IMG/VR virus record: IMGVR_UViG_3300031951_000003
Coordinates: 186,001-250,000 of that record
Length of the DNA stretch: 64,000 nucleotides
Direction: 5' to 3' (one strand)
Shown here: positions 16,589 through 42,793 of the stretch, piece by piece
Numbering within the stretch: the stretch's first letter is position 1
Layout: every line of letters starts with the position of its first letter
Program-made: the position numbers and the translations under genes
The notes under the pieces: model-generated
Database searches by the model: none
Told to the model about the DNA's origin: nothing
What the model saw: the letters and a program-made list of their open reading frames with translations, nothing else

Positions 16589-16996
16589 TTAAAATCTTTT
16601 TTTTGTTCGAAGTTTTATTGGACCATCTTTTTGATATCTGTTCCAATAATCTCTTCCTGGTTTAGAAACATCCGAACCAATCCTGTCTTCTTGTCCGAAA
16701 CTCCATTTATTTCTCGGTACATCCCTTTGGGTAATGTTCTTATACATTTCAAAGTCATCTGGTCCAAACTCAATTTCTTCATCATAATCAAATTCTTCAG
16801 GGTCAACAGGTCTATCGTCTTCATCAAACCAACTGTCTCTGTGACCTAAAATACCCCTGTTTTCAGGTTTCATTTTCATGAAGTGTCTTTTAGGCATTTC
16901 AGTTCCCATATCCAACGAATCAAGTTCATGTTCTTTTAAAACTCTTTTAACCAATCTTATCAAATCAGATTCGGTCAATCTTACTATTTTTGACAT
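16589..16996 (-). CDS. Leader-B protein
   Basis: Start moved to 16996: MSKIVRLTESDLIRLVKRVLKE. Confidence 0.65.
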   Translation of the reverse strand: MSKIVRLTESDLIRLVKRVLKEHELDSLDMGTEMPKRHFMKMKPENRGILGHRDSWFDEDDRPVDPEEFDYDEEIEFGPDDFEMYKNITQRDVPRNKWSFGQEDRIGSDVSKPGRDYWNRYQKDGPIKLRTKKRF

Positions 16997-17078
16997 ATAA
17001 ATTATTTTATTATAAATACTATTTGAAATAAAAAAAAATCCCCTCACTTAGGAGGGGGGTTCTTAAAATTATGTTTGA

Positions 17079-17474
17079 CTACTTCCAACTATCCAAATTT
17101 AATGTCCTAATTTGAGAAATTATTTGGTCATTTATTTTGTTGTAAGAATTGAAATGATAAATTGAGTTATCAATTAAATTCATGAGAGCTTGTTTTCTTG
17201 GTTGTGGCATGTTCAGACCAGATACCTTATTTTTAAGGGATGCCAACTCAGTCATAACTTTGACATTCGGCTCATCTAATTTTTTTAATTTCTTAATCAG
17301 TCTATCGAGTCTTGACAAGTTCTGAAAATAATCCATTCCATATCCTCTTTTAACACCCTTAACACCTCTATAAAAATCACCCAATGCGTCGAACGGACCT
17401 TCGTTTGTTTCTTGTTCTTGTAAAACTTTCTTTACAATTCTATTTAAATCTGATTCAGTTAGTTTTTTTGCCAT
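17079..17474 (-). CDS. Leader-B helical protein
   Basis: MAKKLTESDLNRIVKKVLQEQ. Confidence 0.65.
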   Translation of the reverse strand: MAKKLTESDLNRIVKKVLQEQETNEGPFDALGDFYRGVKGVKRGYGMDYFQNLSRLDRLIKKLKKLDEPNVKVMTELASLKNKVSGLNMPQPRKQALMNLIDNSIYHFNSYNKINDQIISQIRTLNLDSWK

Positions 17475-17487
17475 GTAGATAAATATA

Positions 17488-17787
17488 TCAGACTTTTGAC
17501 TTTGTCATGTCATCGACAAACTCGGGAAATTTTTTTCTAATACATTCATCCAATTGTTTAGCTTCCTCTTTGAAAGATTTACTTGAGGGAAGAAATCGTG
17601 AAATGAAATTAACGATAAGTCTAATGAAACCTCTATTTTTCTTCCCGTCCATATTGGTCAAAGATGCCATCTTTTTTAGATTCAAATCTCTGATGCAATC
17701 GTTTATAACATCTTCCATGTTATGGTATTTCTGCATCATATCTACTGAAGGTGTGGTGATGAGACTATTGGATTCTTTATTTTTCAT
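17488..17787 (-). CDS. Hypothetical protein
   Basis: ORF track. Confidence 0.5.
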   Translation of the reverse strand: MKNKESNSLITTPSVDMMQKYHNMEDVINDCIRDLNLKKMASLTNMDGKKNRGFIRLIVNFISRFLPSSKSFKEEAKQLDECIRKKFPEFVDDMTKSKV

Positions 17788-26301: not shown

Positions 26302-26573
26302 TTATCATCTTTTTTATCAAACAAATACTCATGAAGTATTGTCCCCCCAAATATGAGAATAGCAACCCCAAAGAAAATTATCAATGAATAATCCATATAC
26401 TATTTTTTTGCAAACATAGACCTTTTACAAAAAATTTCCAAAAATTTTTTTTTGACTATAAAGGGGTAAATAAAAAAAGAGGGGTCTTGTCTATGGAACG
26501 TAGTGGAATACTTGTTTTAGAAACATATTTCCAATTTTACAAAATAGAAGGTTTCCATTTTACATATTATAAA

Positions 26574-26599
26574 GGAATTGGAAATATAATTCCAATTCC
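26574..26599. promoter_or_regulatory. Perfect inverted repeat (10-bp arms), possible operator
   Basis: GGAATTGGAA-atataa-TTCCAATTCC in non-coding DNA. Confidence 0.5.
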
Positions 26600-26656
26600 C
26601 ACAAATAAAAAACCCCTCTGTATGAAGTAGGGGTTTAATAAGTATAATTGTTTTTA

Positions 26657-27307
26657 CTATGCCAACATTGTTTGAACATCTTTGATTTGTGTATTGAAGT
26701 CATCAATATAAGGTTTCAACTCTTTTGATTTATTTGATAAAGCTGCGAGTTTGCTTGAGACAATAGCGAGAGCATCTGCGGCTTTTGATTTGAATATTTT
26801 TACAAGAGCAATCATGAAGGAATATTTCCAAGGTTCTTTTGCTAAGTTGAAACCTGCAGATTTTATTATACCCATGTTTTTCATAATCACACGAAGTTCA
26901 AACGGTGTCTTTTTTAATAAAGATTTTACTTCCACTCTCGCAGCAATGTTTGAGGCATTACCTCCAACAGGAATTAGTGACGAAGCAAATGTAACAACCG
27001 CCAATAAAGACATTTCAATTTTTTCTTCAGTTGTCTTTGCAAAGAAATACCTAACAACATATGTGAGAGCATGTGTAACATCAATACCAATTGATATTAG
27101 ATTACCAATTCCTGGTACAGCATCAACCAAACCTGAAACAATATCAGCATAATCATCAGCATCCAAATTTGGACCCAACTTACCCAATTTATTCTGAGCT
27201 GCGACTTGATTATCAACCTTCTTTAATTCACGTCTTTCGTAATCTGTTGAATAACCTTGTTCCATCATGATGGTCTTCAATTGAGATTCTGTGATAATGT
27301 ATTTCAT
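26657..27307 (-). CDS. Leader-A protein with hydrophobic helical hairpins
   Basis: MKYIITESQLKTIMMEQ; DAVPGIGNLISIGID...FASSLIPVGG; related to 21754. Confidence 0.65.
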   Translation of the reverse strand: MKYIITESQLKTIMMEQGYSTDYERRELKKVDNQVAAQNKLGKLGPNLDADDYADIVSGLVDAVPGIGNLISIGIDVTHALTYVVRYFFAKTTEEKIEMSLLAVVTFASSLIPVGGNASNIAARVEVKSLLKKTPFELRVIMKNMGIIKSAGFNLAKEPWKYSFMIALVKIFKSKAADALAIVSSKLAALSNKSKELKPYIDDFNTQIKDVQTMLA

Positions 27308-27384
27308 ATTACAATAAATACTTTGGGAAATAAAAAACCCCCTTCGTGAATGAAGAGGGTCTTGTTATAGAAATTATTTTTTTT

Positions 27385-27858
27385 TTAAATCCCAATACAA
27401 CTTAACAATGCTTTTACATCTTTCGCTGGGTCAGAACCTAAACCACCTTGGTCTTCAGGTAATCCTGTTAAAAAGATTACAATTAGTGAAGATAATGCCA
27501 ACACACCTCCAGCAACCAATCCAACAGGGTTTGCAATTAACATAGCAACGATTCCAAGAGCATAAGCTCCAGCACTTGTAGTTAAAAACATTAAACTTGT
27601 GAGTTGTTTTGATGTGATACATTTTTTGATTTTTTCCTGTATTTTAGGGTCAGGTTTTGCACCACTTTCAAATTTTTGTATTGCCGCATCAATCATTGAT
27701 TGTGCTTCAGCTGATTCGGTCAAATATGGTTTTACATCACCTTGTTTAGTTTCAACCAATTGTTTGAACTTCTCGTTGTAAACTCTCATTCCACCTTTAT
27801 GTTGTTCACGGATGGCGTTTTTTTCTTCTTCAGAAATATTGTTTAAAATGTGTTTCAT
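27385..27858 (-). CDS. Leader-E protein with C-terminal TM hairpin
   Basis: MKHILNNISEEEKNAIREQH; two long hydrophobic helices. Confidence 0.65.
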   Translation of the reverse strand: MKHILNNISEEEKNAIREQHKGGMRVYNEKFKQLVETKQGDVKPYLTESAEAQSMIDAAIQKFESGAKPDPKIQEKIKKCITSKQLTSLMFLTTSAGAYALGIVAMLIANPVGLVAGGVLALSSLIVIFLTGLPEDQGGLGSDPAKDVKALLSCIGI

Positions 27859-27942
27859 AATTTTAATTTTATTATAAATATATTCGGAAATAAAAAACCC
27901 CCTTCGTAATTGAAGAGGGTCTTGTTATTTTGAAATGTTTTA

Positions 27943-28449
27943 TTAGAGCGGACCATATTTTCTCATTCTTCTTGATGCTTGTCTACATTCCTTACTCGTT
28001 CTTGTGTTGCCACCAATCAATTTGATTAGTTTAACAACCAACATTAAAATGATAATACCTGCAAACACCTGAATGAAAACAACAGGGATTGCCATTGCAC
28101 CAATTGTTACAATCTCTCCCACTTGTTCACTTTGAGTTTTTCTTTTGAAAATTGATTTAACCTTTTTGATTAACTCCTTAACATCTTTGGCTGAAGTCAG
28201 ACCATCGATTTGTTCTTTGATTTTCTGAAGCATTGTCTTTTGTTTCTCATCCGCAGTTGGAGGAGTTTCAAGTGGACAATCGTTCAACGCAAATTCAATA
28301 TCTTCAGTCGATACGGGTTCTTCCCCAACTGTTGATAGTTCATTATTAATCACGTCAAGAACTTGAGATTCATCTTCTTTCAATAATCTCTTTTCCAATC
28401 TGATGTTGGCTTCTTGTATGTGTCTGATTTTACTATAACTTCTATTCAT
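27943..28449 (-). CDS. Leader-D protein with C-terminal TM helix
   Basis: MNRSYSKIRHIQEANIRLEKRLLKE. Confidence 0.65.
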   Translation of the reverse strand: MNRSYSKIRHIQEANIRLEKRLLKEDESQVLDVINNELSTVGEEPVSTEDIEFALNDCPLETPPTADEKQKTMLQKIKEQIDGLTSAKDVKELIKKVKSIFKRKTQSEQVGEIVTIGAMAIPVVFIQVFAGIIILMLVVKLIKLIGGNTRTSKECRQASRRMRKYGPL

Positions 28450-28550
28450 AATTTGATTTTATAATAAATACAAAATTTTCCCAAAAATTTTTAAATGAAA
28501 AAACCCCCTTCGAAATTGAAGAGGGTCTTGTTCTATAATTCACAATGATG

Positions 28551-28850
28551 TTATTCATCAAACATTGATTCCAATTCTTTAACAACCTCCTTTGCATAAT
28601 CAATAATCTCATCGGCTTGTTCATCAGTCAAATCGTCGTCTTGATAAGCCTCATGCATTATTTTATAAATTTCATTAATACATCTTTCAACCTCATCCAA
28701 ATCCTCCTCCTCATCCATTGCGTGATTTGCAACCATATCAATTACTTTAAAATAATCTTCAGTAGGGTCATCCTCTCTTCTTTGTTCCTTTACTATCTTA
28801 TTAACCAATCTTGTTAAGTCAGATTCTGTGAGTTTTACTATCTTTTTCAT
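28551..28850 (-). CDS. Leader-B protein with highly acidic payload
   Basis: Start moved to 28850: MKKIVKLTESDLTRLVNKIVKEQ; DEEEDLDEVE, DDDLTDEQADE. Confidence 0.65.
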   Translation of the reverse strand: MKKIVKLTESDLTRLVNKIVKEQRREDDPTEDYFKVIDMVANHAMDEEEDLDEVERCINEIYKIMHEAYQDDDLTDEQADEIIDYAKEVVKELESMFDE

Positions 28851-28940
28851 ATGAAATAAATATCCCAAAAATTTTAAAATGAAAAAACCCCCTTCGTAAT
28901 TGAAGAGGGTTTTGTTCTATAAATTAAGATTATTAGTATC

Positions 28941-29381
28941 TTACAAACTTTGTATCAATTTGAATACTTGACCCCTATTCATATTTTCAGTTTTAATTAA
29001 TTTGGGTTTCTCGTCCCCAACCCTTGTATAATATTCAACTTTGTATGGTCCATTAATGTCTTTTAGTCCACTAAAATATATTTTTTTGAATTCATAATTA
29101 GGGTGATTATTTTTACTCAATTGTATAAAATCCCCTTCATCATCCGAAAAATTTTCAACTTTGTTGTTTCCTTTTGCCATACTAATAAGGTTCTCGGTAT
29201 AGATATTTAGTTTCTGTTTTTTTACATTATTATATCCCTTTTCTCTAAGTATATTTTTAATTTTATTTAAAAAACCACCATATATATCATTTTCACCATC
29301 AGTCTTTGTATTTTGTTCTTTAATAACTTTATTAACCAAACGAATCAAATCGTTTTCTGTTAATCTTATAATCTTTGACAT
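28941..29381 (-). CDS. Leader-B protein, paralogue of 30815
   Basis: MSKIIRLTENDL; shared GPY/FxVEY(Y/F)...KxIKTE C-terminal motif. Confidence 0.65.
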   Translation of the reverse strand: MSKIIRLTENDLIRLVNKVIKEQNTKTDGENDIYGGFLNKIKNILREKGYNNVKKQKLNIYTENLISMAKGNNKVENFSDDEGDFIQLSKNNHPNYEFKKIYFSGLKDINGPYKVEYYTRVGDEKPKLIKTENMNRGQVFKLIQSL

Positions 29382-29491
29382 AGAATTTATTTTCCAATAA
29401 ATATACCAAAAAAGGAGAATTTTTTCCCAAAAATTTTAAAATAAAAAACCCCCTTCTTTTCAGAAGAGGGTCTTGTTTTAAAAAAATATAA

Positions 29492-30007
29492 TTAAATTAA
29501 AGAGAGCTTAATTTTTACACCATTACCCGCGTCAATAGTTGCACTTTTTCCTTGATTACCAGCCAAAGATTGTAATCCCGCATTTAGTTTGTCTTGAGGT
29601 ACTCTAAATTTCATCCATCCATCGGAGGTCAGAGCGTCGGTAGGAATTAATTCTTTCATGATTTTTTTCATAGCATTACCTGATGGTTGAGCTTCTCCCA
29701 GTAATGTTCCTTGTCTGTCTCTTCTAACATTTCTCAAAATTACATTAAAAGGCACGTTAGGTAAAAATGAACCTGGGTCATACACCCCTTTTACACTGTA
29801 TTTGTAAGTTGTGTTTGGAATGTTCTGTCCTTTGTTGTCTCTTTGTGAAAGATAAATTGTACCAGTTCCGTCGCTTGAAGCATTAACCAAAGCTGGAGTT
29901 GCAAGAACAGTTAACAAAGGAACTTGAGCCATAGGTGCTTGTTCTTTTATAACTCTCTTAACCAAATTCAACAAGTCGGATTCAGTTAATTTTATAATTT
30001 TCGACAT
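29492..30007 (-). CDS. Leader-B beta-rich protein
   Basis: MSKIIKLTESDLLNLVKRVIKEQ. Confidence 0.65.
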   Translation of the reverse strand: MSKIIKLTESDLLNLVKRVIKEQAPMAQVPLLTVLATPALVNASSDGTGTIYLSQRDNKGQNIPNTTYKYSVKGVYDPGSFLPNVPFNVILRNVRRDRQGTLLGEAQPSGNAMKKIMKELIPTDALTSDGWMKFRVPQDKLNAGLQSLAGNQGKSATIDAGNGVKIKLSLI

Positions 30008-30110
30008 ATAACTTATTTTACTATAAATAGACCCAAAAAGGACAATTTTTTCCCAAAAAATTTTTTTAAGAAAAAACCCCCTTCGTAATTGAAGAGGGTC
30101 TTATTTCAGA

Positions 30111-30407
30111 TTAACTTTGACCGAATCGTCTGTAGTATCTTATTTCATAATATCTTTTATCCTTACAATCTATTCTTGTTCTAGAACCATACTCATATGA
30201 GGGAATACAAAAACCTGATTTAATATTTTTTATTAGTTCTTCAGTTGATTTAACCGCATTAGGGTCTGATTTTATTGTTTGAGGAGTTGATTGTTCAGAA
30301 AGATTGTGCATACCAAATCTACTTTCAGGTTGTTCCTTCAATAATCTTTTTTCCAACATTAAATTTGATTCCTGAATATGTCTTATTTTACTGAAACTTC
30401 TATTCAT
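30111..30407 (-). CDS. Leader-D protein
   Basis: Start moved to 30407: MNRSFSKIRHIQESNLMLEKRLLKEQ. Confidence 0.65.
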   Translation of the reverse strand: MNRSFSKIRHIQESNLMLEKRLLKEQPESRFGMHNLSEQSTPQTIKSDPNAVKSTEELIKNIKSGFCIPSYEYGSRTRIDCKDKRYYEIRYYRRFGQS

Positions 30408-30462
30408 AAAATATGTTTCCAATAAATACTCCCAAAAATTTTTTTCTCAGTTGAAGGATAAA

Positions 30463-30714
30463 TTAAATCAAATGGTCGTGTTTTAGAAAAAGAATATAAC
30501 CTTCAATATCTCTCAATACTTGGTTTACATTCCTACCCGACAAATGATAAAACCCATGTTTACTTTTTTTGATTGTTATAAGTTCCCCATTTGAAAAATA
30601 TATTCTTTTCGGTGACCTTCTAACAACCGAGACCTTATTACTCCCATTCATATAATGGTCCCCAACATTACAATCCAAAATAAACTGATGTGATTTTATC
30701 CATAAATTTTCCAT
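30463..30714 (-). CDS. Hypothetical protein under a host-type promoter
   Basis: No leader; sigma-A promoter at 30719-30750. Confidence 0.55.
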   Translation of the reverse strand: MENLWIKSHQFILDCNVGDHYMNGSNKVSVVRRSPKRIYFSNGELITIKKSKHGFYHLSGRNVNQVLRDIEGYILFLKHDHLI

Positions 30715-30718
30715 AACA

Positions 30719-30750
30719 CAAAAATAAGAAATGTTCTTTTTTTTCCCAAA
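30719..30750 (-). promoter_or_regulatory. Bacteroidota sigma-A promoter
   Basis: Minus strand TTTG-N20-TATTTTTG. Confidence 0.7.
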
Positions 30751-30814
30751 AATTTCAAATTAAAAAACCCCCTTCGTTTCGGAAGAGGGTCATGTTTATA
30801 GTTAAATTTCTTTA

Positions 30815-31198
30815 TTACCCAAAGTTTTGGAGAAGTTGCCCAATTTTATATCCATCCAATTTTTCTGTTTTGATTTTTTTTCCACCTTTAAAATATTCTA
30901 CAACGAAAGGTCCGAACATACTATAGTTATTCAAATAAATTATTGTAGATTCTGGACTTGTCCCCGTGTCACTTAAAATCAATTTTTTTTGACCTCCTTC
31001 ATCATAAAAATCAACCGTGTAAGGTCTCTTGTACATTGATAAAAGTGAATAATTGCTTTTAATAAGTTTGAATCCTTTCTTTAAAAAATCTTTTTTTACC
31101 ATTTGTAAAAAAGATTCTAAAGTCTCTGATTGTTCTTGAATTACTCTTTTCGCCAAACGAACCAAATCTTGTTCTGTAAGTTTTATAACTTTTGACAT
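30815..31198 (-). CDS. Leader-B protein
   Basis: Start moved to 31198: MSKVIKLTEQDLVRLAKRVIQEQ. Confidence 0.65.
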   Translation of the reverse strand: MSKVIKLTEQDLVRLAKRVIQEQSETLESFLQMVKKDFLKKGFKLIKSNYSLLSMYKRPYTVDFYDEGGQKKLILSDTGTSPESTIIYLNNYSMFGPFVVEYFKGGKKIKTEKLDGYKIGQLLQNFG

Positions 31199-31308
31199 AT
31201 AAATAATTTTATTATAAATATACCGAAAAAGGACAATTTTTCCCAAAAATTTTTTTTGCGTTATTCAAGGTATTATCCCCCCCAAAACTGACATTTTGAC
31301 CTACATAA

Positions 31309-31369
31309 GGGGGGATACGGGGGGAGGGGGGCCCCCATAGGGGGGTATGCCCCCATGCCGAAGGGGGGT
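31309..31369 (+). other. G-tract cluster, potential G-quadruplex/hairpin
   Basis: Five G6 runs at about 31309, 31319, 31326, 31340 and 31363, interleaved with C5 runs. Confidence 0.6.
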
Positions 31370-31371
31370 GT

Positions 31372-31430
31372 TGTGGATAAATAGTTATTCCCACCCCCTA
31401 TACATTTATCAACAGATAGGATGTGGAAAA
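31372..31430. promoter_or_regulatory. DnaA-box-like cluster 1
   Basis: TGTGGATAA (perfect, 31372-31380), TTATCAACA (31406-31414), TGTGGAAAA (31422-31430). Confidence 0.55.
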
Positions 31431-31445
31431 GTTAATTTGGTTTTG

Positions 31446-31940
31446 TCAGAATGTCCGATTTCGTTCAGTGAATACTGCGTCAGATGGTATCTCTTTTATC
31501 TCGGGGATAATCCATGACCCCACCACGAAGCTTCTACCTTTACGTATCTTAAGGTCTTCGGGGATTGCGTTAGATGTGGATACAGATTTCATTGTCTTCT
31601 CCACGTCGGCTTGTATATCTTGTGTCTGTTCTCTATCCACATTAAACATTGTGGCGAGGTATGAGGTTTCATAAGTGTTTGGGAGGTGATGACCAAGTCT
31701 TTTATCCAAATAATATCTTAGGTATGATACCATTGGCCACCCCGTTTGTTTTTGTAGGATGAAGGGGTCCACGAACACGTCGAGGAAGATGAGGTTATAT
31801 TGGTTTATCTCCTCATCACTTGGGACCCTGATATCTATAATCCATGGGTATTCCCTTTTAAGAATCCTTTTGATTAACTTATACTCATAGGAGCTTTCCA
31901 CTTCATCTTTGGTTACATAGTTATGTTGTTCGACAGGCAT
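31446..31940 (-). CDS. Hypothetical protein
   Basis: ILKREYPWIIDIRV; ATAAATA upstream. Confidence 0.55.
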   Translation of the reverse strand: MPVEQHNYVTKDEVESSYEYKLIKRILKREYPWIIDIRVPSDEEINQYNLIFLDVFVDPFILQKQTGWPMVSYLRYYLDKRLGHHLPNTYETSYLATMFNVDREQTQDIQADVEKTMKSVSTSNAIPEDLKIRKGRSFVVGSWIIPEIKEIPSDAVFTERNRTF

Positions 31941-32097
31941 TAAAAAAAATAAATTTGGTTATATCATAAATACTTCGGACCTTTGTTATGTCTGAAGCGG
32001 GAGTGTATGGACGGGCTGGGGAATAACCCTTGGAGCTGAATCAGAGGTAGCTTGCTTATACCCCATGGATAAGATTTCTTTTGGTGGAATGAAATAA

Positions 32098-32514
32098 TTG
32101 TCGTATCTTTGCCTTATGTTATATCTTAAAACCCCGACCATCACGATGACCACCCCATATATTAGGGACGTGGTTGGTGAGACCATTATGTGGTGTGAGA
32201 AGAACATGGGAAAAAAAAGGAAGAGGACCAAACTTAAGTTTAGGGTTCTGACTCAGACCCATGGGGAAAATTGTTATGGGATGTATGACCCCAAAAAGAA
32301 TACCATCATCGTCCACAGAAATATGTGTCAGTCGGTGAGAGATGTGGTGAAGGTTGTCATTCATGAGTATACCCATTTTCTTCAGGACCTTCGTGGATAT
32401 TCGAAGGTATTAAGGGAAGTTGGATATAGAAGACACCCACAAGAAGTTGAGGCGAGGGGGAATGAAAAATTGTTTTCGAAATGTTGGACCGATATAAAAA
32501 ATAACTTATGTTAA
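32098..32514 (+). CDS. HEXXH zinc metallopeptidase-like protein
   Basis: VVIHEYTHFLQ...HPQEVEA. Confidence 0.7.
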   Translation: MSYLCLMLYLKTPTITMTTPYIRDVVGETIMWCEKNMGKKRKRTKLKFRVLTQTHGENCYGMYDPKKNTIIVHRNMCQSVRDVVKVVIHEYTHFLQDLRGYSKVLREVGYRRHPQEVEARGNEKLFSKCWTDIKNNLC

Positions 32515-32719
32515 GAATTATTTATTTTCTTATTCTTGGGTTTCTGTTTGTTTGGGGTTGGAATCATATCCCGAACTTTATGGCTTACCTTTTCGTGGGA
32601 GCCCTTGTTGCATTTTTCATCAAACAAACAAAAGATTAAATGAGACGATTTTTAAAAGCCCTTCTTGTTGGCTACATTATCCTTGGTGTGTGGGATATTC
32701 TCTTTGGAAAAAAGAAACC

Positions 32720-33001
32720 TTAGAGCCCCGCCCCTCTTATTAACTCCCTACACTTCTCTATTATCTGAGTTGGGGTAATGGACTCGTCTTTCGTATAGAG
32801 TCCCTCCACTTTTGCATCCACGCATGCCCATGCGTTTAGTCCGATAGGTTTTCTTACAAACCCCGTCTTTGCCTTCTCGAAATATAAAATCCCTAAGTGT
32901 TCCCTCAGGTCCCCGAGCTTGAAACTTACCTCCACCGATATTCGGTCAGGGGTAATCAGTGTGATATCAAATGACAGTTTGTCCATGGTCCCATTAAACA
33001 T
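32720..33001 (-). CDS. Hypothetical protein
   Basis: ORF track. Confidence 0.5.
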   Translation of the reverse strand: MFNGTMDKLSFDITLITPDRISVEVSFKLGDLREHLGILYFEKAKTGFVRKPIGLNAWACVDAKVEGLYTKDESITPTQIIEKCRELIRGAGL

Positions 33002-33028
33002 AGTTTAGGAACATATAAAAATAAAGAA

Positions 33029-33210
33029 TGTGGAAAACTTCTTTTGGTCCTGACGCTATGTCAGTGTGGAAAACTTTTCTTTCGTTGGGGGTAAATGTGG
33101 ATAACTTTTTTTGATTTTGTCATAATGTCAGGGGAGCGTTGCATAGGGGATAATCCCCTCGACCCATTTTCCCCCACTTTTCCCCACCACTCATTCCCAC
33201 ATTTTCCCAC
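33029..33210. promoter_or_regulatory. DnaA-box-like cluster 2 with pyrimidine-rich TTCCC(C)AC repeats
   Basis: TGTGGAAAA at 33029 and 33065, TGTGGATAA (perfect) at 33096-33104, AGGGGA-taa-TCCCCT at 33145-33159. Confidence 0.55.
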
Positions 33211-33513
33211 CACTTATGGTCATGTAGATAGTGTAAAGACCACTTTTTCCCCTCTCACGGTATCAGGAAGACCAGTTTTTTAATATGTATGTTTCTTAGC
33301 AAAAAAAGGAAGATTAAGTATGAGACGGGGGGAGTGAACGTAGTGAACCTTTAATGTGTATTAATTAACCTTCAACGAGAGGGACATTTTGTCTCCCTGT
33401 AGCGATGGACAAGTAGTATATGGTGGTAAAATGTGGAGGTAAAAAGTTATAGATATGATTATAGTTTATCACGATAGTGTTGTATATTGTAATCATGTTT
33501 ATAACTTATCATA

Positions 33514-33589
33514 TATCGTTTCGTTATACGATATGTCATTATATCGTGTGAATATACGATTGTCTATAATATCGTTTCATTAGACGATT
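33514..33589. repeat. Three tandem palindromes TATCGT-N8-ACGATW at 28-bp period
   Basis: Copies at 33514-33533, 33542-33561 and 33570-33589. Confidence 0.85.
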
Positions 33590-33690
33590 ATGTAATCACC
33601 ATCTCATCTGTCCCCTCACTGAGTGGGGGGAACTTATGGGTGGGGGAAAAGTCAAGTTCATATACTGTGTAGTCTTACTTTTTTATGTAA

Positions 33691-33712
33691 AAGTAAAGTT
33701 ATAACTTTACTT
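33691..33712. promoter_or_regulatory. 22-bp perfect palindrome, probable operator
   Basis: AAGTAAAGTTATAACTTTACTT, 21 bp upstream of ATG 33734. Confidence 0.6.
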
Positions 33713-33733
33713 AAATGGGTGATACTTATTACT

Positions 33734-34192
33734 ATGATATACTTTATAGAAAATTTAGAAACCAAACACATTAAAATTGGTTTCACTACAGATATTAAAA
33801 ATAGACTAAGTAACTTACAGACATCTTCACCATATGAGTTAAAAGTGTTAGCGGTTTGTGAAGGAAATGATAAAACCGAAAAAGAATTACATATTAAATT
33901 TAACGATTACCATACCAGAGGAGAGTGGTTTAATCCTAATAAAGAATTGATTGACTATATCAGTCAGTTCCCCCCATATAAGTCAGATAACAAACAACAC
34001 GGTAATTTAGCTAGTCTAAGAAAACAGAAGAAGATGAGTATGGAAGAAGTTGGTAAAAAAATGAAGATAAGTAAACAAGCTGTTTCAGATATCGAAAAGA
34101 GATACGAATATGGTAATATAACAATCAAAAACCTTAGGTCATATCTTGATGCTATTGGTTATGATGTTACTATAGTTTTCTCGCCGAAATAA
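33734..34192 (+). CDS. T5orf172 (GIY-YIG-like) domain fused to XRE-family HTH
   Basis: MIYFIE...IKIGFT...RLSNLQTSSPYEL...EKELH..F.....RGEWF; LASLRKQKKMSMEEVGKKMKISKQAVSDIE. Confidence 0.8.
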   Translation: MIYFIENLETKHIKIGFTTDIKNRLSNLQTSSPYELKVLAVCEGNDKTEKELHIKFNDYHTRGEWFNPNKELIDYISQFPPYKSDNKQHGNLASLRKQKKMSMEEVGKKMKISKQAVSDIEKRYEYGNITIKNLRSYLDAIGYDVTIVFSPK

Positions 34193-34285
34193 GATTATAC
34201 AACAAGTGAGTGAATGAAGGACACTCCCGAACCTTTAGGTGAGGGATGTATTGTGTCCGTAGTGAATGAACTTGTTGTATAATCT
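34192..34285. repeat. Structured element copy 1 (nested hairpin)
   Basis: 16-bp perfect outer stem AGATTATACAACAAGT/ACTTGTTGTATAATCT; inner GGACAC/GTGTCC, TCCC/GGGA and ACC-ttta-GGT. Confidence 0.8.
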
Positions 34286-35036
34286 AAACTTGATAAACTT
34301 CATATGAGATAGGGATAGATAGTGATTGTTTGATGTTATCAATCATGCCCGTTCTTTGTTTAACATTTCCCCATGTAATGAAGAAAAGACCATTTTCTAA
34401 CTGAATGAAGCTATTTCTGTTCATTTTTTTTGGGTCTGAAGTCATAGACGAAGGGAGTTCATCTTTTGTCTTTTTGAAGTAATTGGGTAACTTGGTAAGT
34501 AAAACTTCAGGTGAGAAATTGGTTGAGAGATACTGACCAAGAAGAACATATCTATCAATAGTTGTATCCGCGACAAATTCAGTATTATCAATAAAGATTT
34601 TGATTGAAGACCTGACTTTTTTGATATTTTCTAAAATCTCAATTTTTTGAGTTTGAGTGGTCCCTGAATCTGAGACAATTGATTCAGTTAAATCAAGTTC
34701 AAGTGTTTCGGGAAAATAATTGGTAAGTTTAGTAATTTTTTTGTGTAATAAATCCTCATCATCACAATCAAACCATTCAGTGGTAATACTTTTTCTATCG
34801 TTATATTCTTTAGTAACTCTATATTCTTCGAAACATGCGTGGAGGGCCTTTTCTAAGGAACTCATGTGATTAGTTTGGAATATACGTATAAACACAACGT
34901 CCACAGGCATGTGTGTAGAATTTAACGCGGTTTCTCGGGATTTATAATCTATGGACCGACCTAACTTATAATAATTCGTTATAAAATTACCAAGATGGTC
35001 AACCATTCTTCCAATGTAACAATAACCTTGACTCAT
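34284..35036 (-). CDS. T5orf172 (GIY-YIG-like) nuclease with C-terminal putative DNA-binding domain
   Basis: GYCYIG...YYKLGRS...RETALNST...LEKALH...TEWF. Confidence 0.75.
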   Translation of the reverse strand: MSQGYCYIGRMVDHLGNFITNYYKLGRSIDYKSRETALNSTHMPVDVVFIRIFQTNHMSSLEKALHACFEEYRVTKEYNDRKSITTEWFDCDDEDLLHKKITKLTNYFPETLELDLTESIVSDSGTTQTQKIEILENIKKVRSSIKIFIDNTEFVADTTIDRYVLLGQYLSTNFSPEVLLTKLPNYFKKTKDELPSSMTSDPKKMNRNSFIQLENGLFFITWGNVKQRTGMIDNIKQSLSIPISYEVYQV

Positions 35037-35175
35037 AAATTATTTTATGAGCTAAAATAAAAAATATTTTTCTTCTTACAAAAAATTATTTTACCCCCTC
35101 ACTTATGCGGGGGGTTTATTAGGTGGGGGGTTATCTTTAATCTTGTATGAATCAACAAGGATTACTTAACAGTTC

Positions 35176-35292: not shown

Positions 35293-35547
35293 ATGGATAT
35301 GGGAGAAGCACTTCAGAAGATATTAGAACAATTGATTGTAAAGAAGTATAATTCACTTATTGGAGTGGATGTTTCTAACTTTTATATGAATGAGGATTGG
35401 TATAGAATTACTTATTATTTTAATCCACCACTTGAGCATAAAGATGCTATTGAGATTATGGAAGAGACCGCGACTTTATATAAAATGCTTGGTCCGAGTG
35501 GTAAGGGAGACATAATCGTTGATTTTAAAAAAGTTGAGGATAAATGA
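35293..35547 (+). CDS. Hypothetical protein
   Basis: Sense TATTTAT at the start (true ATG possibly 35299). Confidence 0.55.
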   Translation: MDMGEALQKILEQLIVKKYNSLIGVDVSNFYMNEDWYRITYYFNPPLEHKDAIEIMEETATLYKMLGPSGKGDIIVDFKKVEDK

Positions 35548-35861
35548 CCGTCGAACAAGAAGTAAATAGGATTGTTAAATTTGTTAAGGAATTATATTCC
35601 CCCTATGATGTTTATGTTCAGGGCAGTAAAATGGGTAAGTATAGTATCATATTTTACTTCGAGGAAATCGACGACAGGTATATTGTTAATCCGCAGCATA
35701 AGGACCAAAAACAACATAAAGCCAACATGTTTAAACGCGAAATTAGAGACCAAATATATAACTTCTTCGGAATCAAAACCACGGGACTGCAACCAAATGA
35801 TTATTTTTCCCCACACGAAGAACACCCTATAACAATCGTTGTAACCTATGTAAATAAATAA
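35544..35861 (+). CDS. Hypothetical protein resembling the payload of 55357
   Basis: IIFYF...MFKREIRDQIYNFFGI. Confidence 0.55.
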   Translation: MTVEQEVNRIVKFVKELYSPYDVYVQGSKMGKYSIIFYFEEIDDRYIVNPQHKDQKQHKANMFKREIRDQIYNFFGIKTTGLQPNDYFSPHEEHPITIVVTYVNK

Positions 35862-35863
35862 TC

Positions 35864-36247
35864 ATGAGATATATTATAACACAAACACAACTTCATTCTT
35901 TGATATACAGATACTTGAATGAAATGTTCTCTAACAAAGACTTTAGAAAAGAAATTAATCCATATGTAAAAGACGGTAATACATGGAGGATTAATATGTT
36001 TGATAATGATGGTAATGAACTCATGAACTATTTTTGGTTTGGGCCAGGTAATTCTTGGGACGACGACGAAGATACTCCTCCACACAATGGTGTTGGTAGT
36101 CTTCACATCCACCACAGAATTGTTGATGCACTGAAAAAGACATTCTCCATTAGAGAAAGCAAGGTTCTTGATATCGTTGCTGATTGGGTTAGTGAGACTT
36201 TGGGTGGTGATATTGATGAGATTGACATTTACCCCACCAAAAACTAA
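35864..36247 (+). CDS. Leader-A, W-F family-like protein
   Basis: MRYIITQTQLHSLIYRYLNE; IVADWVSETL. Confidence 0.6.
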   Translation: MRYIITQTQLHSLIYRYLNEMFSNKDFRKEINPYVKDGNTWRINMFDNDGNELMNYFWFGPGNSWDDDEDTPPHNGVGSLHIHHRIVDALKKTFSIRESKVLDIVADWVSETLGGDIDEIDIYPTKN

Positions 36248-41003: not shown

Positions 41004-41588
41004 TCAGAATGGATAATCATAGTTTAACATACTACAGTAGTCTTGAGAACAGGAAAAAATAATATCTTTGATTTCCTGAGTGAAATATTTGTCAACGTCA
41101 TTTATGACATCGGTATCATTATCTTTAATAGAACATAAATTTCTAATTTGAACTAATTTATCGAAATCGGAATTTGCTATGAAAGGTATTTTATTGTAAT
41201 CATCATAAAGATTTTCGATTCTGATAAAATAATCCGGAGTCCTTTCCTTAAATGGCCAAATTATACATCTCAATGTTGTTTTAGGAAAGTTCATATAAAA
41301 ATAGTTCTGAAAACTTTCAGGACTCCAAATATTCGGATTTTTGTGATTAAATTTATAAAAAGATAAAATTCTTGAAAATGGATTTCGAGCCGTAGATAAA
41401 AAAATATAATCTTTGTGTCCGCTTGGATAATCGAAGGAATGGTTATTGTTTAACGGGATTACTTTCAAACCATCAGGCGTTTTTTTGTAAGTTGAAAATC
41501 CGTAGTTTTTCAAAACTTTTACACAATGAACCGAACCTGTTCTAGCTTGTAACCAAACAAATGATTTATTAATTTCTGATATGTTCAT
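41004..41588 (-). CDS. Sulfotransferase family 2-like protein
   Basis: [28 protein letters not shown]. Confidence 0.7.
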
Positions 41589-42793
41589 ACGAAAACTTTG
41601 GGTATTTCATCCCAAGATGTGGTATACTTTTGGGACATGAAATCTTGTCTCATCTCCCACTCTTTTTTTTTGTTTATGGGTGCCTGAACTAACTGTATTG
41701 AAGTTGTAAATAAAGTGGGTTGTTCTATATTCTCGGGCATAAGTTCATTAAATATAATTCCACATTTTTTATAATTCTTACTTGAGTTATAAATTTTCTT
41801 TAAGTGTGGATATACCTGGCTCCATATTTCATCCACATCTCTTGTTTGTTTTTGAAATGTAATCTGTTTACTCGAGTAATGTTTTTCACCTTTATGAACA
41901 TTTCCACTTAAAAATATGGTTGCTCGGTTTGGTGATATTTCATTATCAATAAGTTTTTTCACCCCGTTTTTAATATATGTATACATGGCCTCAGATAATT
42001 GATTAAAATCATTTACGTCTTGTCCGAATGACCTTGTTGATGCTATGTTCTTTTTTAACTTTGGTAATGGTTTTACAGGATGACAATACATACCAAGAAG
42101 TTCACACTTTGTTCTAAGTCCATTTACATTCATCATTTTTCTGACAATACTATCAGACATCATAACAAATTGACCAACACTCTCAACTCCTAAGTTTTTT
42201 AATTTTTTATTCCACTGTCTACCAATACCCCAAACCTCATCTACAGATATTGTGTAAAGTGATTCCCTAAAATCATGCAAACTCCAATATGAACAAACAC
42301 CATCGTATGATTGTTGTTGTTTGGCTATATGTGATGTAAGTTTGGCTAATGTCTTATTTGGACCGACACCTATTGAAACAGGAACTCCTGTAAGTCTTTT
42401 AACCTCATTACGAATAAGATGTAATCTATCTAAAAGTTCATCATCGGGTATATTAGAAAAATCCACAAAACACTCATCAATAGAATAGACCTCAACTTCT
42501 TTAGCATACTTCTTTATGGTTGTCATGACTCTGTCTGACATATCTCCATACAAGTTATAGTTTGATGAATAAACACAGAATCTATGTTCTTCCATGAAGT
42601 CTTTTTTCATAAAGAAAGGTTCACCCATTTTGATTCCAAGGGCTTTGGCTTCTTGAGAGCGGGCAATAACACAACCATCGTTGTTAGATAAAACAACTGT
42701 AGGTCTCCCAATGGAGATTGGATTGAAAACTCTTTCACAACTAACGTAAAAATTGTTACAATCTACAATACCGATTTTTTTATTGGACTGCAT
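41585..42793 (-). CDS. umuC: Y-family DNA polymerase V catalytic subunit
   Basis: [42 protein letters not shown]-terminal [16 protein letters not shown]. Confidence 0.93.

What the first reader, a model, noticed from the sequence alone, without database searches (positions are those of the whole stretch)
31273..31455. G-quadruplex-like tract abutting DnaA boxes where the long minus-strand gene run ends
Seen: five G6 tracts (31309-31369) directly followed by a perfect DnaA box (31372-31380) and two one-mismatch boxes. The cluster is flanked by CTGACATTTTGAC (31288-31300) and GTCAGAATGTC (31445-31455). Almost all genes left of ~32 kb are on the minus strand, while plus-strand genes appear at 32-36 kb. 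Established: TTATCCACA is the DnaA consensus. Inference: part of a phage replication origin using host DnaA, or a DnaA-titrating site, with a G4 or R-loop element.
Basis: partly seen in the sequence, partly recalled or inferred. Interest (0 to 1): 0.65.

Follow-up and report, generated by a model that had tools for sequence, protein, structure and literature searches.

The report
Conserved DnaA-box and G-tract phage element
A 190-base non-coding stretch of an uncultured 321-kb freshwater phage joins host-type DnaA boxes to an array of G-runs; the same element is kept almost unchanged in many related phages whose neighbouring proteins have drifted to about 30% identity, so it is a real control site on the DNA, although its role (replication start, gate or transcription control) is not yet shown.

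Summary
The G/C-run cluster (31277-31398) is unique in the 321-kb genome and is its strongest G-quadruplex-prone site. The densest cluster of DnaA-box matches in the genome lies at 31372-33104. Relatives settle that it is functional: an 18-base core (31306-31323) recurs in at least 120 freshwater metagenome contigs. All 59 distinct versions studied keep 4-6 G-runs. Of these, 56 keep boxes of only four kinds (TTATCCACA commonest) just upstream. The same two small genes (88 and 164 aa) precede the element, and an early-type promoter follows it. The 164-aa protein is only 26-40% identical across these contigs. No RNA structure signal, Rfam match, intrinsic terminator or precise DNA end was found. 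The origin reading is not confirmed. A strand-corrected GC-skew model gives no inflection here. The phage's helicase and polymerase genes lie about 150-190 kb away. The "end of the minus-strand run" is a small island made partly of recent gene insertions. Best reading: a DNA-level module that recruits host DnaA beside a structure-prone G-tract block, most likely a site for starting or controlling replication. The closest known parallel is the DnaA-box repeat regions of phage T5.

The parts
31269..31283 (-). G7 run followed by ATAAT (read on the minus strand). It closes the element 10-15 bases before the promoter A/T tract. It resembles a -10 hexamer.
   Evidence: Invariant in alignment A2. Kept family-wide as G5-7 + (A/T)(T/C)AAT.
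31288..31300 (-). The same kind of pair recurs at 31445-55, 33049-64 and 33118-31.
   Evidence: GTCAnAATGTC occurs 4 times in the genome, 3 of them in this locus. Family members carry TGACA/TGTCA in all combinations at this place.
31306..31323 (-). Invariant 18-base core: two C6 runs joined by GTAT on the minus strand, which reads G6-ATAC-G5 on the plus strand.
   Evidence: Identical in all relatives of alignment A2. An exact-match scan found at least 120 metagenome contigs.
31309..31368 (+). G-tract array: five G6 runs with two C5 runs between them. It is the strongest G-quadruplex-prone site of the genome.
   Evidence: All 59 family members have 4-6 runs of G4 or longer; 55 have a four-tract motif with loops up to 12.
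31372..31430 (.). DnaA-box cluster: 31372-80 (-, perfect), 31386-94 (+, TTATTCCCA; TTATCCCCA in relatives), 31406-14 (+, TTATCAACA), 31422-30 (-, TTTTCCACA).
   Evidence: The family-wide box density peaks at 6-17 per kb in the 200 bases upstream of the core, against about 0-0.4 per kb downstream of it.
31421..31458 (+). 38-base composite repeat (box + T-rich tract + pentamer pair). It overlaps the stop codon of the 164-aa gene. Paralogous copies lie at 33094-33131 and, more diverged, at 33027-33064.
31446..31940 (-). Gene for a 164-aa protein of unknown fold (p164). It is always found just upstream of the element.
   Evidence: Homologues at 55-69% identity and 26-40% identity. The gene ends 105-200 bases before the core in 38 of 54 contigs with enough DNA. 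No family or fold match.
32720..32986 (-). Gene for an 88-aa protein (p88). The true start is the second Met. It is the first gene of the two-gene unit.
   Evidence: 78% identical in near relatives and 33-67% across the family. No fold match.
32987..33622 (.). Second conserved non-coding block at a divergent-transcription hub. It holds boxes at 33029, 33065 and 33096; the palindrome GGGGATAATCCCC at 33146-58; C-rich direct repeats at 33163-217; and three ATCGT-N8-ACGAT palindromes exactly 28 bases apart (33515-88) in a stretch of 26% G+C.
31198..31258 (-). Promoter of the first gene of the small-gene array (TTTG ... TATATTTA, then ATG at 31197). The same promoter is repeated before each gene from 26.4 to 31.3 kb.
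   Evidence: It follows the element in nearly all family members.

Best explanation
The stretch 31269-31430 is a cis-acting DNA element, not a gene and not an RNA. It belongs to a three-part unit kept throughout a large family of uncultured freshwater phages, probably of Bacteroidota hosts. The unit consists of two small genes (p88, p164), then a cluster of DnaA boxes, then an array of G-runs with a nearly invariant core, then an early-type promoter.

Proposed working:
1. Host DnaA, which the phage does not encode, binds the boxes. These flank both small genes in two to three clusters.
2. It builds a nucleoprotein complex directly beside a block of DNA that can leave the B-form: a G-quadruplex on the plus strand, C-rich folds or G/C hairpins on the other.
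3. I take this to be a site where phage DNA replication is started or licensed. p88 and p164 would be the phage-specific partners. The second block (32987-33622), with its AT-rich stretch and 28-base periodic palindromes, would be the other half.

Shown: the anatomy, the uniqueness, the conservation and the linkage to the genes.
Inferred: DnaA binding, the non-B structure, and the replication role.
For: - Unique, non-random cluster.
- The core block is 84-90% identical where the adjacent gene is 67-71% identical at DNA level and 55-58% at protein level.
- The family-wide scan shows an invariant core, G-tracts in 59 of 59 versions and boxes in 56 of 59. The perfect DnaA consensus is the modal variant: 70 of about 140 boxes, against 0.001 per sequence in shuffles.
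- Box density peaks just upstream of the core and again around p164 and p88.
- Among near relatives, changes at box positions mostly stay inside the accepted consensus TTWTNCACA.
- The phage has no dnaA gene.
- There is no covariation, no fold excess and no Rfam match, so the constraint acts on the DNA sequence itself.
- The second block has an AT-rich (26% G+C) stretch with three palindromes at exact 28-base spacing, also present in relative G008.
- Layouts with DnaA boxes beside initiator genes and repeats are established for P1, F and pSC101 origins (textbook knowledge).
Against: - A strand-corrected GC-skew model gives no origin signal at 215-222 kb: R2 gain 0.02-0.04, against 0.10 for about 300 kb.
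- The DnaB-like helicase gene (genome 27 kb) and the family-B polymerase gene (63 kb) are far from the element at 217 kb.
- The DNA directly beside the boxes is G/C-rich, not an easily melted AT-rich stretch.
- The closely spaced box pair is inverted with a 4-6 base gap. E. coli DnaA prefers tandem pairs 2-3 bases apart (PMC11317965). An inverted pair also fits a dimeric phage protein.
- p164 and p88 show no initiator fold. A language-model hint to plasmid Rep families was not borne out.
- No binding or replication data exist.
Confidence: 0.4

Rival explanations
1. Operator and insulator of a transcription hub. A phage-encoded dimeric protein (p88, p164 or a product of the divergent operon at 35293-36247), not DnaA, binds the inverted box pairs and the pentamer pairs. 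The two homologous blocks, 1.1-1.7 kb apart, control the two-gene unit and the first early promoter, possibly by looping. The G/C block keeps the units apart.
For: - The closest box pair is a 22-base imperfect palindrome. One relative has its 4-base centre inverted.
- One box overlaps the -33 region of the p88 promoter.
- Two homologous blocks bracket an operon, and a promoter always follows the element.
- There are three evenly spaced palindromes between divergent genes.
Against: - The modal site is exactly the universal 9-base DnaA consensus, and the variants are those seen in T5. That would be a coincidence for an unrelated protein.
- The sites stay constant while the candidate phage proteins diverge to 26-40% identity.
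- No DNA-binding fold was found in p88 or p164.
Confidence: 0.25
2. A boundary element of the T5 kind: DnaA boxes in conserved repeat regions beside the early genes hold or gate the incoming or replicating DNA (injection stop or a similar checkpoint), not an origin.
For: - Same four box variants as in T5.
- The boxes come in pairs.
- Two related repeat blocks bracket a few genes.
- The non-coding blocks are better conserved than the ORFs.
- An endonuclease gene has inserted into a repeat block.
- The neighbours are many small genes with their own strong promoters (for T5; here).
Against: - The T5 model is itself an untested proposal (preprint 10.1101/866236).
- The physical ends of this genome are unknown. 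The record's 344-base 'terminal repeat' lies inside a tandem-repeat gene, so it is an assembly circle.
- T5 has no G-tract array that I know of.
- The repeat blocks are mostly direct here and inverted in T5.
Confidence: 0.15
3. Transcription stop for the p88-p164 unit. The C-rich transcript acts as a Rho loading site, or the G/C hairpins block the polymerase. The element would take the place that a hairpin-plus-T terminator holds in every other cassette of the array.
For: - It sits exactly where the other cassettes carry a terminator.
- The transcript is C-rich.
- Runs are kept while loops vary in length and sequence.
Against: - No terminator-like site is called here, while six are called in the cassettes.
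- No T tract follows the element.
- Letter-for-letter conservation of the ATAC and A loops, and of the boxes, is not needed for a stop signal.
- Most members carry G runs that would pair with and hide the C runs.
Confidence: 0.1
4. A structured non-coding RNA, a packaging or terminus site, or an assembly artefact.
For: Contig ends fall within 120 bases of the core twice as often as expected: 14 against 6.9.
Against: - Fold z-scores are -0.4 and +0.1.
- There is one compensatory pair in 36 and a positive covariation term.
- No Rfam match.
- The contig ends are scattered over about 150 bases, not at one base.
- Six assemblies have identical sequence, and the stretch is present in runs of 14 studies.
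Confidence: 0.05

Closest known systems
Repeat regions 2 and 3 (injection stop signal region) of phage T5 and relatives (Davison, bioRxiv 10.1101/866236)
   Same: - Conserved untranslated repeat blocks that are better kept than the ORFs.
- DnaA boxes in close pairs.
- The same variants: TTATCCACA, TTATCAACA, TTATTAACA, TTATCCCCA, TTATTCACA.
- Two related blocks bracket a few genes.
- An endonuclease gene has inserted in a block.
- They lie beside early genes.
   Different: - No G-tract array is described there.
- The T5 blocks are inverted copies inside a 10-kb terminal repeat. Here they are mainly direct, and the genome ends are unknown.
- The host is probably Bacteroidota, not Escherichia.
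- There is no sequence homology.
Plasmid and prophage origins that need both a Rep protein and DnaA (P1 oriR, F oriS, pSC101, RK2)
   Same: DnaA boxes beside repeated protein-binding sites that flank a small initiator gene, with an AT-rich stretch nearby (layout only; textbook knowledge).
   Different: - p164 and p88 have no winged-helix Rep fold or family match.
- No clear 17-22 base iteron array lies next to the boxes.
- A G/C-rich block stands where an unwinding element would be expected.
Conserved sequence block II of mitochondrial DNA (G-runs joined by one A) and the ColE1 primer region
   Same: The motif G6-A-G4-6 is nearly invariant here: 57 of 59 versions. In those systems G-rich RNA and DNA form a stable hybrid or quadruplex that ends transcription and makes a replication primer (my knowledge).
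   Different: There the non-template strand and the RNA are G-rich. Here the known transcription reads the other way, giving C-rich RNA, and I found no rightward promoter.
datA and DARS DnaA-binding clusters of E. coli
   Same: Non-origin clusters of a few DnaA boxes that act on DnaA itself.
   Different: These are chromosomal, use tandem boxes 2-3 bases apart and have no G-tract block. No effect on host DnaA is shown here.

Membership tests
DnaA-box cluster (site bound by the bacterial initiator DnaA) | 9-base sites matching TTATCCACA or TTWTNCACA | tested here: met
   In the window there is one perfect box and one consensus-fitting box in the element, plus three more 1.7 kb away. In the family 43 of 59 versions have a perfect box and 56 of 59 have one of the four variants.
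DnaA-box cluster (site bound by the bacterial initiator DnaA) | Clustering beyond chance and conservation of the sites | tested here: met
   It is the densest 2-kb window of the genome; 18 of 5000 random placements reach it. The family density is 6-17 per kb against about 0-0.4 per kb downstream of the core.
DnaA-box cluster (site bound by the bacterial initiator DnaA) | Tandem pairs 2-3 bases apart, as preferred by E. coli DnaA | tested here: not met
   The close pairs are inverted with gaps of 4-6 bases (PMC11317965). The host is not E. coli, so the weight of this test is limited.
DnaA-box cluster (site bound by the bacterial initiator DnaA) | Physical binding of DnaA | not testable with these tools
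   This needs a gel shift or ChIP.
Replication origin | GC-skew inflection after removing the strand effect of genes | tested here: not met
   The test is weak for phages that replicate by recombination or rolling circle.
Replication origin | AT-rich unwinding stretch next to initiator sites | tested here: inconclusive
   There is none beside the element. A stretch of 26% G+C with periodic palindromes lies in the partner block at 33437-33600. Its sequence is poorly conserved.
Replication origin | Adjacent initiator gene | tested here: inconclusive
   p164 is always adjacent, and a language-model search points only to Rep families. Fold and profile searches give nothing.
Replication origin | Autonomous replication or initiation mapped in vivo | not testable with these tools
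   The raw-read runs hold almost none of this phage.
G-quadruplex-forming sequence | Four or more G-tracts of 3 or more bases with short loops | tested here: met
   In the window the loops are 4, 1 and 8, and G4Hunter gives 2.84. In the family 36 of 59 versions have loops up to 7 and 55 of 59 have loops up to 12.
G-quadruplex-forming sequence | Folding in vitro or in vivo | not testable with these tools
   Only an energy model with quadruplexes allowed was run: -73.9 against -30.3 kcal/mol. Neighbouring C runs compete for the G runs.
Structured RNA | Covarying base pairs or a fold more stable than shuffles | tested here: not met
   no Rfam match.
Intrinsic terminator | G+C hairpin followed by a T run | tested here: not met

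The most novel reading that the evidence does not exclude
A large family of uncultured freshwater phages shares an ultra-conserved origin-type element. In it, host DnaA and a G-quadruplex (or its C-rich counterpart) act together with two unknown small proteins to start or gate phage DNA replication. This would be the first conserved quadruplex-bearing initiation site in a bacterial virus, and a phage use of DnaA outside the enterobacterial models.
Probability: 0.2. Interest if true: 0.85.

Novelty: new variant of a known kind. Interest (0 to 1): 0.62.

Why it matters
Conserved non-coding control sites of uncultured phages are almost unexplored. This one is easy to recognise from its 18-base core. 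It is widespread in lakes: at least 120 contigs carry the core, and this phage alone appears in sequencing runs of 14 studies. It is better conserved than the proteins beside it.

It ties a universal host protein site (the DnaA box) to a G-quadruplex motif. That makes two open questions directly testable:
- whether lytic or jumbo phages outside E. coli exploit host DnaA;
- whether quadruplex DNA has a selected function in bacterial viruses.

It also gives independent comparative weight to the unproven idea that the DnaA boxes of phage T5 are functional. Finally, it marks p88 and p164 as proteins worth studying.

Tried and rejected
- RNA gene: rejected. Rfam gave nothing at gathering scores or at E up to 1, there is no fold excess and no covariation.
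- Intrinsic terminator: rejected.
- Sequencing or assembly artefact: rejected. Generic poly-G patterns in IMG/VR mostly hit contig ends, but this stretch is internal and identical in six assemblies.
- Physical terminus or pac site: not supported. Contig ends near the core are scattered. The record's 'terminal repeat' is a 344-base overlap inside a repeat-rich gene.
- Read laying gave nothing. The two raw-read runs held 2 and 7 reads, and the other two runs were only contigs.
- p164 as a Rep initiator: a language-model lead was not confirmed by Foldseek, VIA-align, the Atlas fold search, a PDB profile search or Pfam. The AlphaFold model had pLDDT 73 from a shallow alignment.
- p88: the model was poor (pLDDT 67) and had no match.
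- GenBank phages: no similar DNA.
- Host origin comparison: a 5.1-Mb Chitinophagaceae genome has 45 perfect boxes without a tight cluster. This was uninformative and I dropped it.
Its right arm lies in the last codons of p164 and differs in relatives.
- The unrelated viral hits to the box-pair pattern are within chance expectation.

Full report
**Setting.** The window is bases 186,001-250,000 of a 321,139-base IMG/VR virus record rated complete. Its 'direct terminal repeat' is a 344-base overlap inside a tandem-repeat coding region. The map is therefore an assembly circle, and the physical ends are unknown. The phage has no dnaA gene. It has a DnaB-like helicase gene at genome 27 kb and a family-B polymerase gene at 63 kb. 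A Bacteroidota host is likely. The genes lack Shine-Dalgarno sequences. The repeated promoters read TTTG ... TAnnTTT. The best bacterial relatives of its Y-family polymerase gene are nearly all Bacteroidota, at 34-44% identity. The phage occurs in lake and freshwater sequencing runs of 14 studies.

**Observation.**
- The cluster of nine G or C runs in 122 bases is the only such cluster in the genome.
- It is the genome's top G4Hunter site. The only two other sites at or above 2.0 lie 2.3 and 3.8 kb away, in the same locus.
- TTWTCCACA occurs nine times in 321 kb. Five of these lie within 1.7 kb here, all in one orientation and all intergenic.
- For TTWTNCACA this is the densest 2-kb window of the genome; 18 of 5000 random placements reach it.

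**Local anatomy.** The element lies between two minus-strand genes. Upstream is a 164-aa ORF (p164, 31446-31940). Downstream is the first of a series of small genes. Each gene of that series has the same cassette of hairpin-plus-T terminator and promoter, from 26.4 to 31.3 kb. At the place where the other cassettes carry the terminator, this one carries the G/C block.

A second non-coding block (32987-33622) shares several parts with the element:
- a 38-base composite repeat;
- three more boxes;
- pentamer pairs of the TGWCA type;
- GGGGATAA motifs.

In the relative G008 both blocks carry the same triplet of boxes: reverse, gap of 4-5, forward, gap of 7, reverse. The second block also has an AT-rich stretch (26% G+C) with three ATCGT-N8-ACGAT palindromes exactly 28 bases apart. 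Only five matches to that pattern exist in the genome.

**What is ancestral.** Relatives lack window 31989-32747, which holds a SprT-like gene. They also lack 33650-35094, which holds two T5orf172/GIY-YIG-like genes, one of them with an HTH domain. The ancestral layout was therefore, from right to left in window coordinates:
1. three plus-strand genes (35293-36247);
2. about 1 kb of conserved non-coding DNA;
3. p88 and then p164, both on the minus strand;
4. the element;
5. the promoter array.

The 'end of the minus-strand run' is thus a small divergent hub enlarged by insertions. Minus-strand genes resume at 36.2 kb.

**Conservation, near relatives.** Homologues of p164 at 55-69% identity lie on short lake contigs.
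- The element downstream of them is 84-90% identical over 133 columns.
- The gene itself is 67-71% identical at DNA level.
- Against G008 the sliding identity is 0.87-0.92 over 31220-31400, against 0.55-0.75 in p164.
- Box changes among these relatives mostly stay within the accepted degenerate positions of the DnaA consensus: TTTTCCACA, TTATCCACA, TTATTCACA. The recurring exception is TTATCCCCA.

**Conservation, whole family.** The invariant 18-mer (31306-31323, minus strand) was scanned against JGI metagenomes. Of 64 distinct 263-base versions, 5 are unrelated chance hits and serve as controls.

In the other 59:
- 43 have a perfect TTATCCACA within 150 bases upstream. The mean is 1.19 per sequence, against 0.001 in shuffles.
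- 56 have at least one of exactly four variants: TTATCCACA (70 instances), TTATTAACA (29), TTATCCCCA (22), TTATCAACA (15).
- Box density is 6-17 per kb in the 200 bases before the core and near zero after it. It rises again around the start of p164 and upstream of p88.
- All 59 have 4-6 runs of G4 or longer on the G-rich strand.
- 36 have a canonical four-tract motif with loops up to 7, and 55 with loops up to 12. None of the five controls does.
- The A loop next to the scanned core, which the scan itself did not require, is kept in 57 of 59 (the ATAC loop lies inside the scanned 18-mer).
- One member has no complementary C run at all. The G-tract array, not G/C pairing, is therefore the common denominator.
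- Where hairpins are possible, their loops vary in length and sequence.
- p164 homologues of only 26-40% identity still end 105-200 bases before the core in 38 of 54 contigs with enough upstream DNA. p88 homologues (33-67%) lie further upstream.

The scan required the 18-mer, so its invariance is selected. The flanks were not selected.

**What it is not.**
- Not an RNA. There is no Rfam match. Fold z-scores are -0.4 and +0.1. Only one compensatory pair was found among 36.
- Not an intrinsic terminator.
- Not an artefact.
- Not a precise DNA end. Contig ends are twice as frequent near the core (14 against 6.9), but they are scattered, as expected of assembly breaks at homopolymers.

**Origin test.** Raw cumulative skew follows gene orientation. 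I fitted a model with a gene-strand term and a replication term over all pairs of origin and terminus positions.
- The best fit has an origin near 300 kb and a terminus near 90 kb (R2 gain 0.10).
- An origin forced to 215-222 kb gains 0.02-0.04 and ranks 523rd to 2677th of 9592.

This is negative. It is not decisive for a phage that has its own replisome and may replicate by recombination or rolling circle.

**Partners.** p164 and p88 have no Pfam, PHROG or PDB relatives and no convincing fold match. A language-model search returned only plasmid Rep families among the named clusters for p164, with scores of 0.89-0.91. I report this as an unconfirmed lead.

**Interpretation.** The constraint acts on the DNA letters. 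It is much stronger than the constraint on the neighbouring phage proteins. The boxes are the universal DnaA consensus, with the same tolerated variants that Davison lists for T5. That pattern is what one expects if a conserved host protein reads the site.

I therefore rate DnaA binding at about 0.6. Within that I prefer a role in replication initiation or control (0.4 overall). The alternatives are a phage-protein operator or insulator (0.25), a T5-like boundary (0.15), a transcription stop (0.1) and others (0.05).

Three points count against the DnaA and origin reading:
- the inverted arrangement of the box pairs;
- the G/C-rich neighbourhood of the boxes;
- the skew result.

The G-rich strand is the template of the known leftward transcription. 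A transcription-made quadruplex or R-loop of the mitochondrial or ColE1 kind would therefore need a rightward promoter, and I did not find one.

**Verdict.** The finding is real and conserved. It is more interesting than a single-genome curiosity, because it defines a widespread element. The DnaA and G4 association is supported comparatively. The origin claim remains a hypothesis.

Noticed in passing
window 26400-31270: An array of small hypothetical genes. Each is preceded by the same cassette: a 12-13 bp hairpin plus T-run terminator, then a roughly 45-base promoter. This resembles the promoter-early stem-loop cassettes that shuffle genes in T4-type phages. The gene content of the array differs between relatives.
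   Followed up: partly
window 33596-33655 and 35080-35145: The 1.4-kb insertion carrying two T5orf172/GIY-YIG-like genes (33623-34192 +, 34284-35036 -) is flanked by a direct duplication of about 40 bases (CCCCTCAC...G6...GGTGGGG). This sequence is single-copy in relatives. Both copies are among the only three G4Hunter peaks of the genome.
   Followed up: partly
window 31989-32747: A SprT-like / DUF6782 metallopeptidase-like gene (32098-32514 +) sits between p88 and p164 only in this phage lineage. Relatives join 31988 directly to 32748.
   Followed up: partly
window 33515-33588; G008 87884-87929: Three 18-base palindromes (ATCGT-N8-ACGAT) exactly 28 bases apart in an AT-rich stretch. Two of them are conserved in relative G008, which lacks the adjacent HTH gene, so they are not that gene's private operators.
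   Followed up: partly
loci L084, L086, L089: Two Lake Erie contigs carry different deletions that both begin right after the same bases of the core (C7-GTA). One scaffold has a gap flanked by a duplicated right half of the element. This is either a rearrangement hot spot or misassembly at homopolymers.
   Followed up: no
genome 1-5000, 270001-275000, 320001-321139: Segments of 46-50% G+C in a genome that averages 35%. The first and last are a gene made of tandem repeats coding Pro/Glu/Asp/Val-rich units, and this gene also produces the apparent terminal repeat.
   Followed up: partly
window 41585-42793: A complete Y-family (UmuC/DinB-like) translesion polymerase gene whose nearest bacterial relatives are almost all Bacteroidota (34-44% identity). 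Beside it lie thioesterase, flavodoxin-like, sulfotransferase-like and C39 peptidase genes.
   Followed up: partly
G006 base 1; G007 base 1: The contigs of two divergent relatives both end inside the second repeat block, at the equivalents of window 33040 and 33133. G006 starts with a perfect TTATCCACA.
   Followed up: no
window 31569-31647: Inside the p164 gene, an 18-base inverted repeat carries two one-mismatch boxes (GTATCCACA and CTATCCACA) 43 bases apart.
   Followed up: no
window about 17000-17600: A paralogue (54% identity over residues 10-68) of the N-terminal part of the ORF 30815-31246, the first array gene (its true start is probably the ATG at 31197), lies about 14 kb to the left. 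It has a copy of the same promoter at 16988-17018.
   Followed up: no
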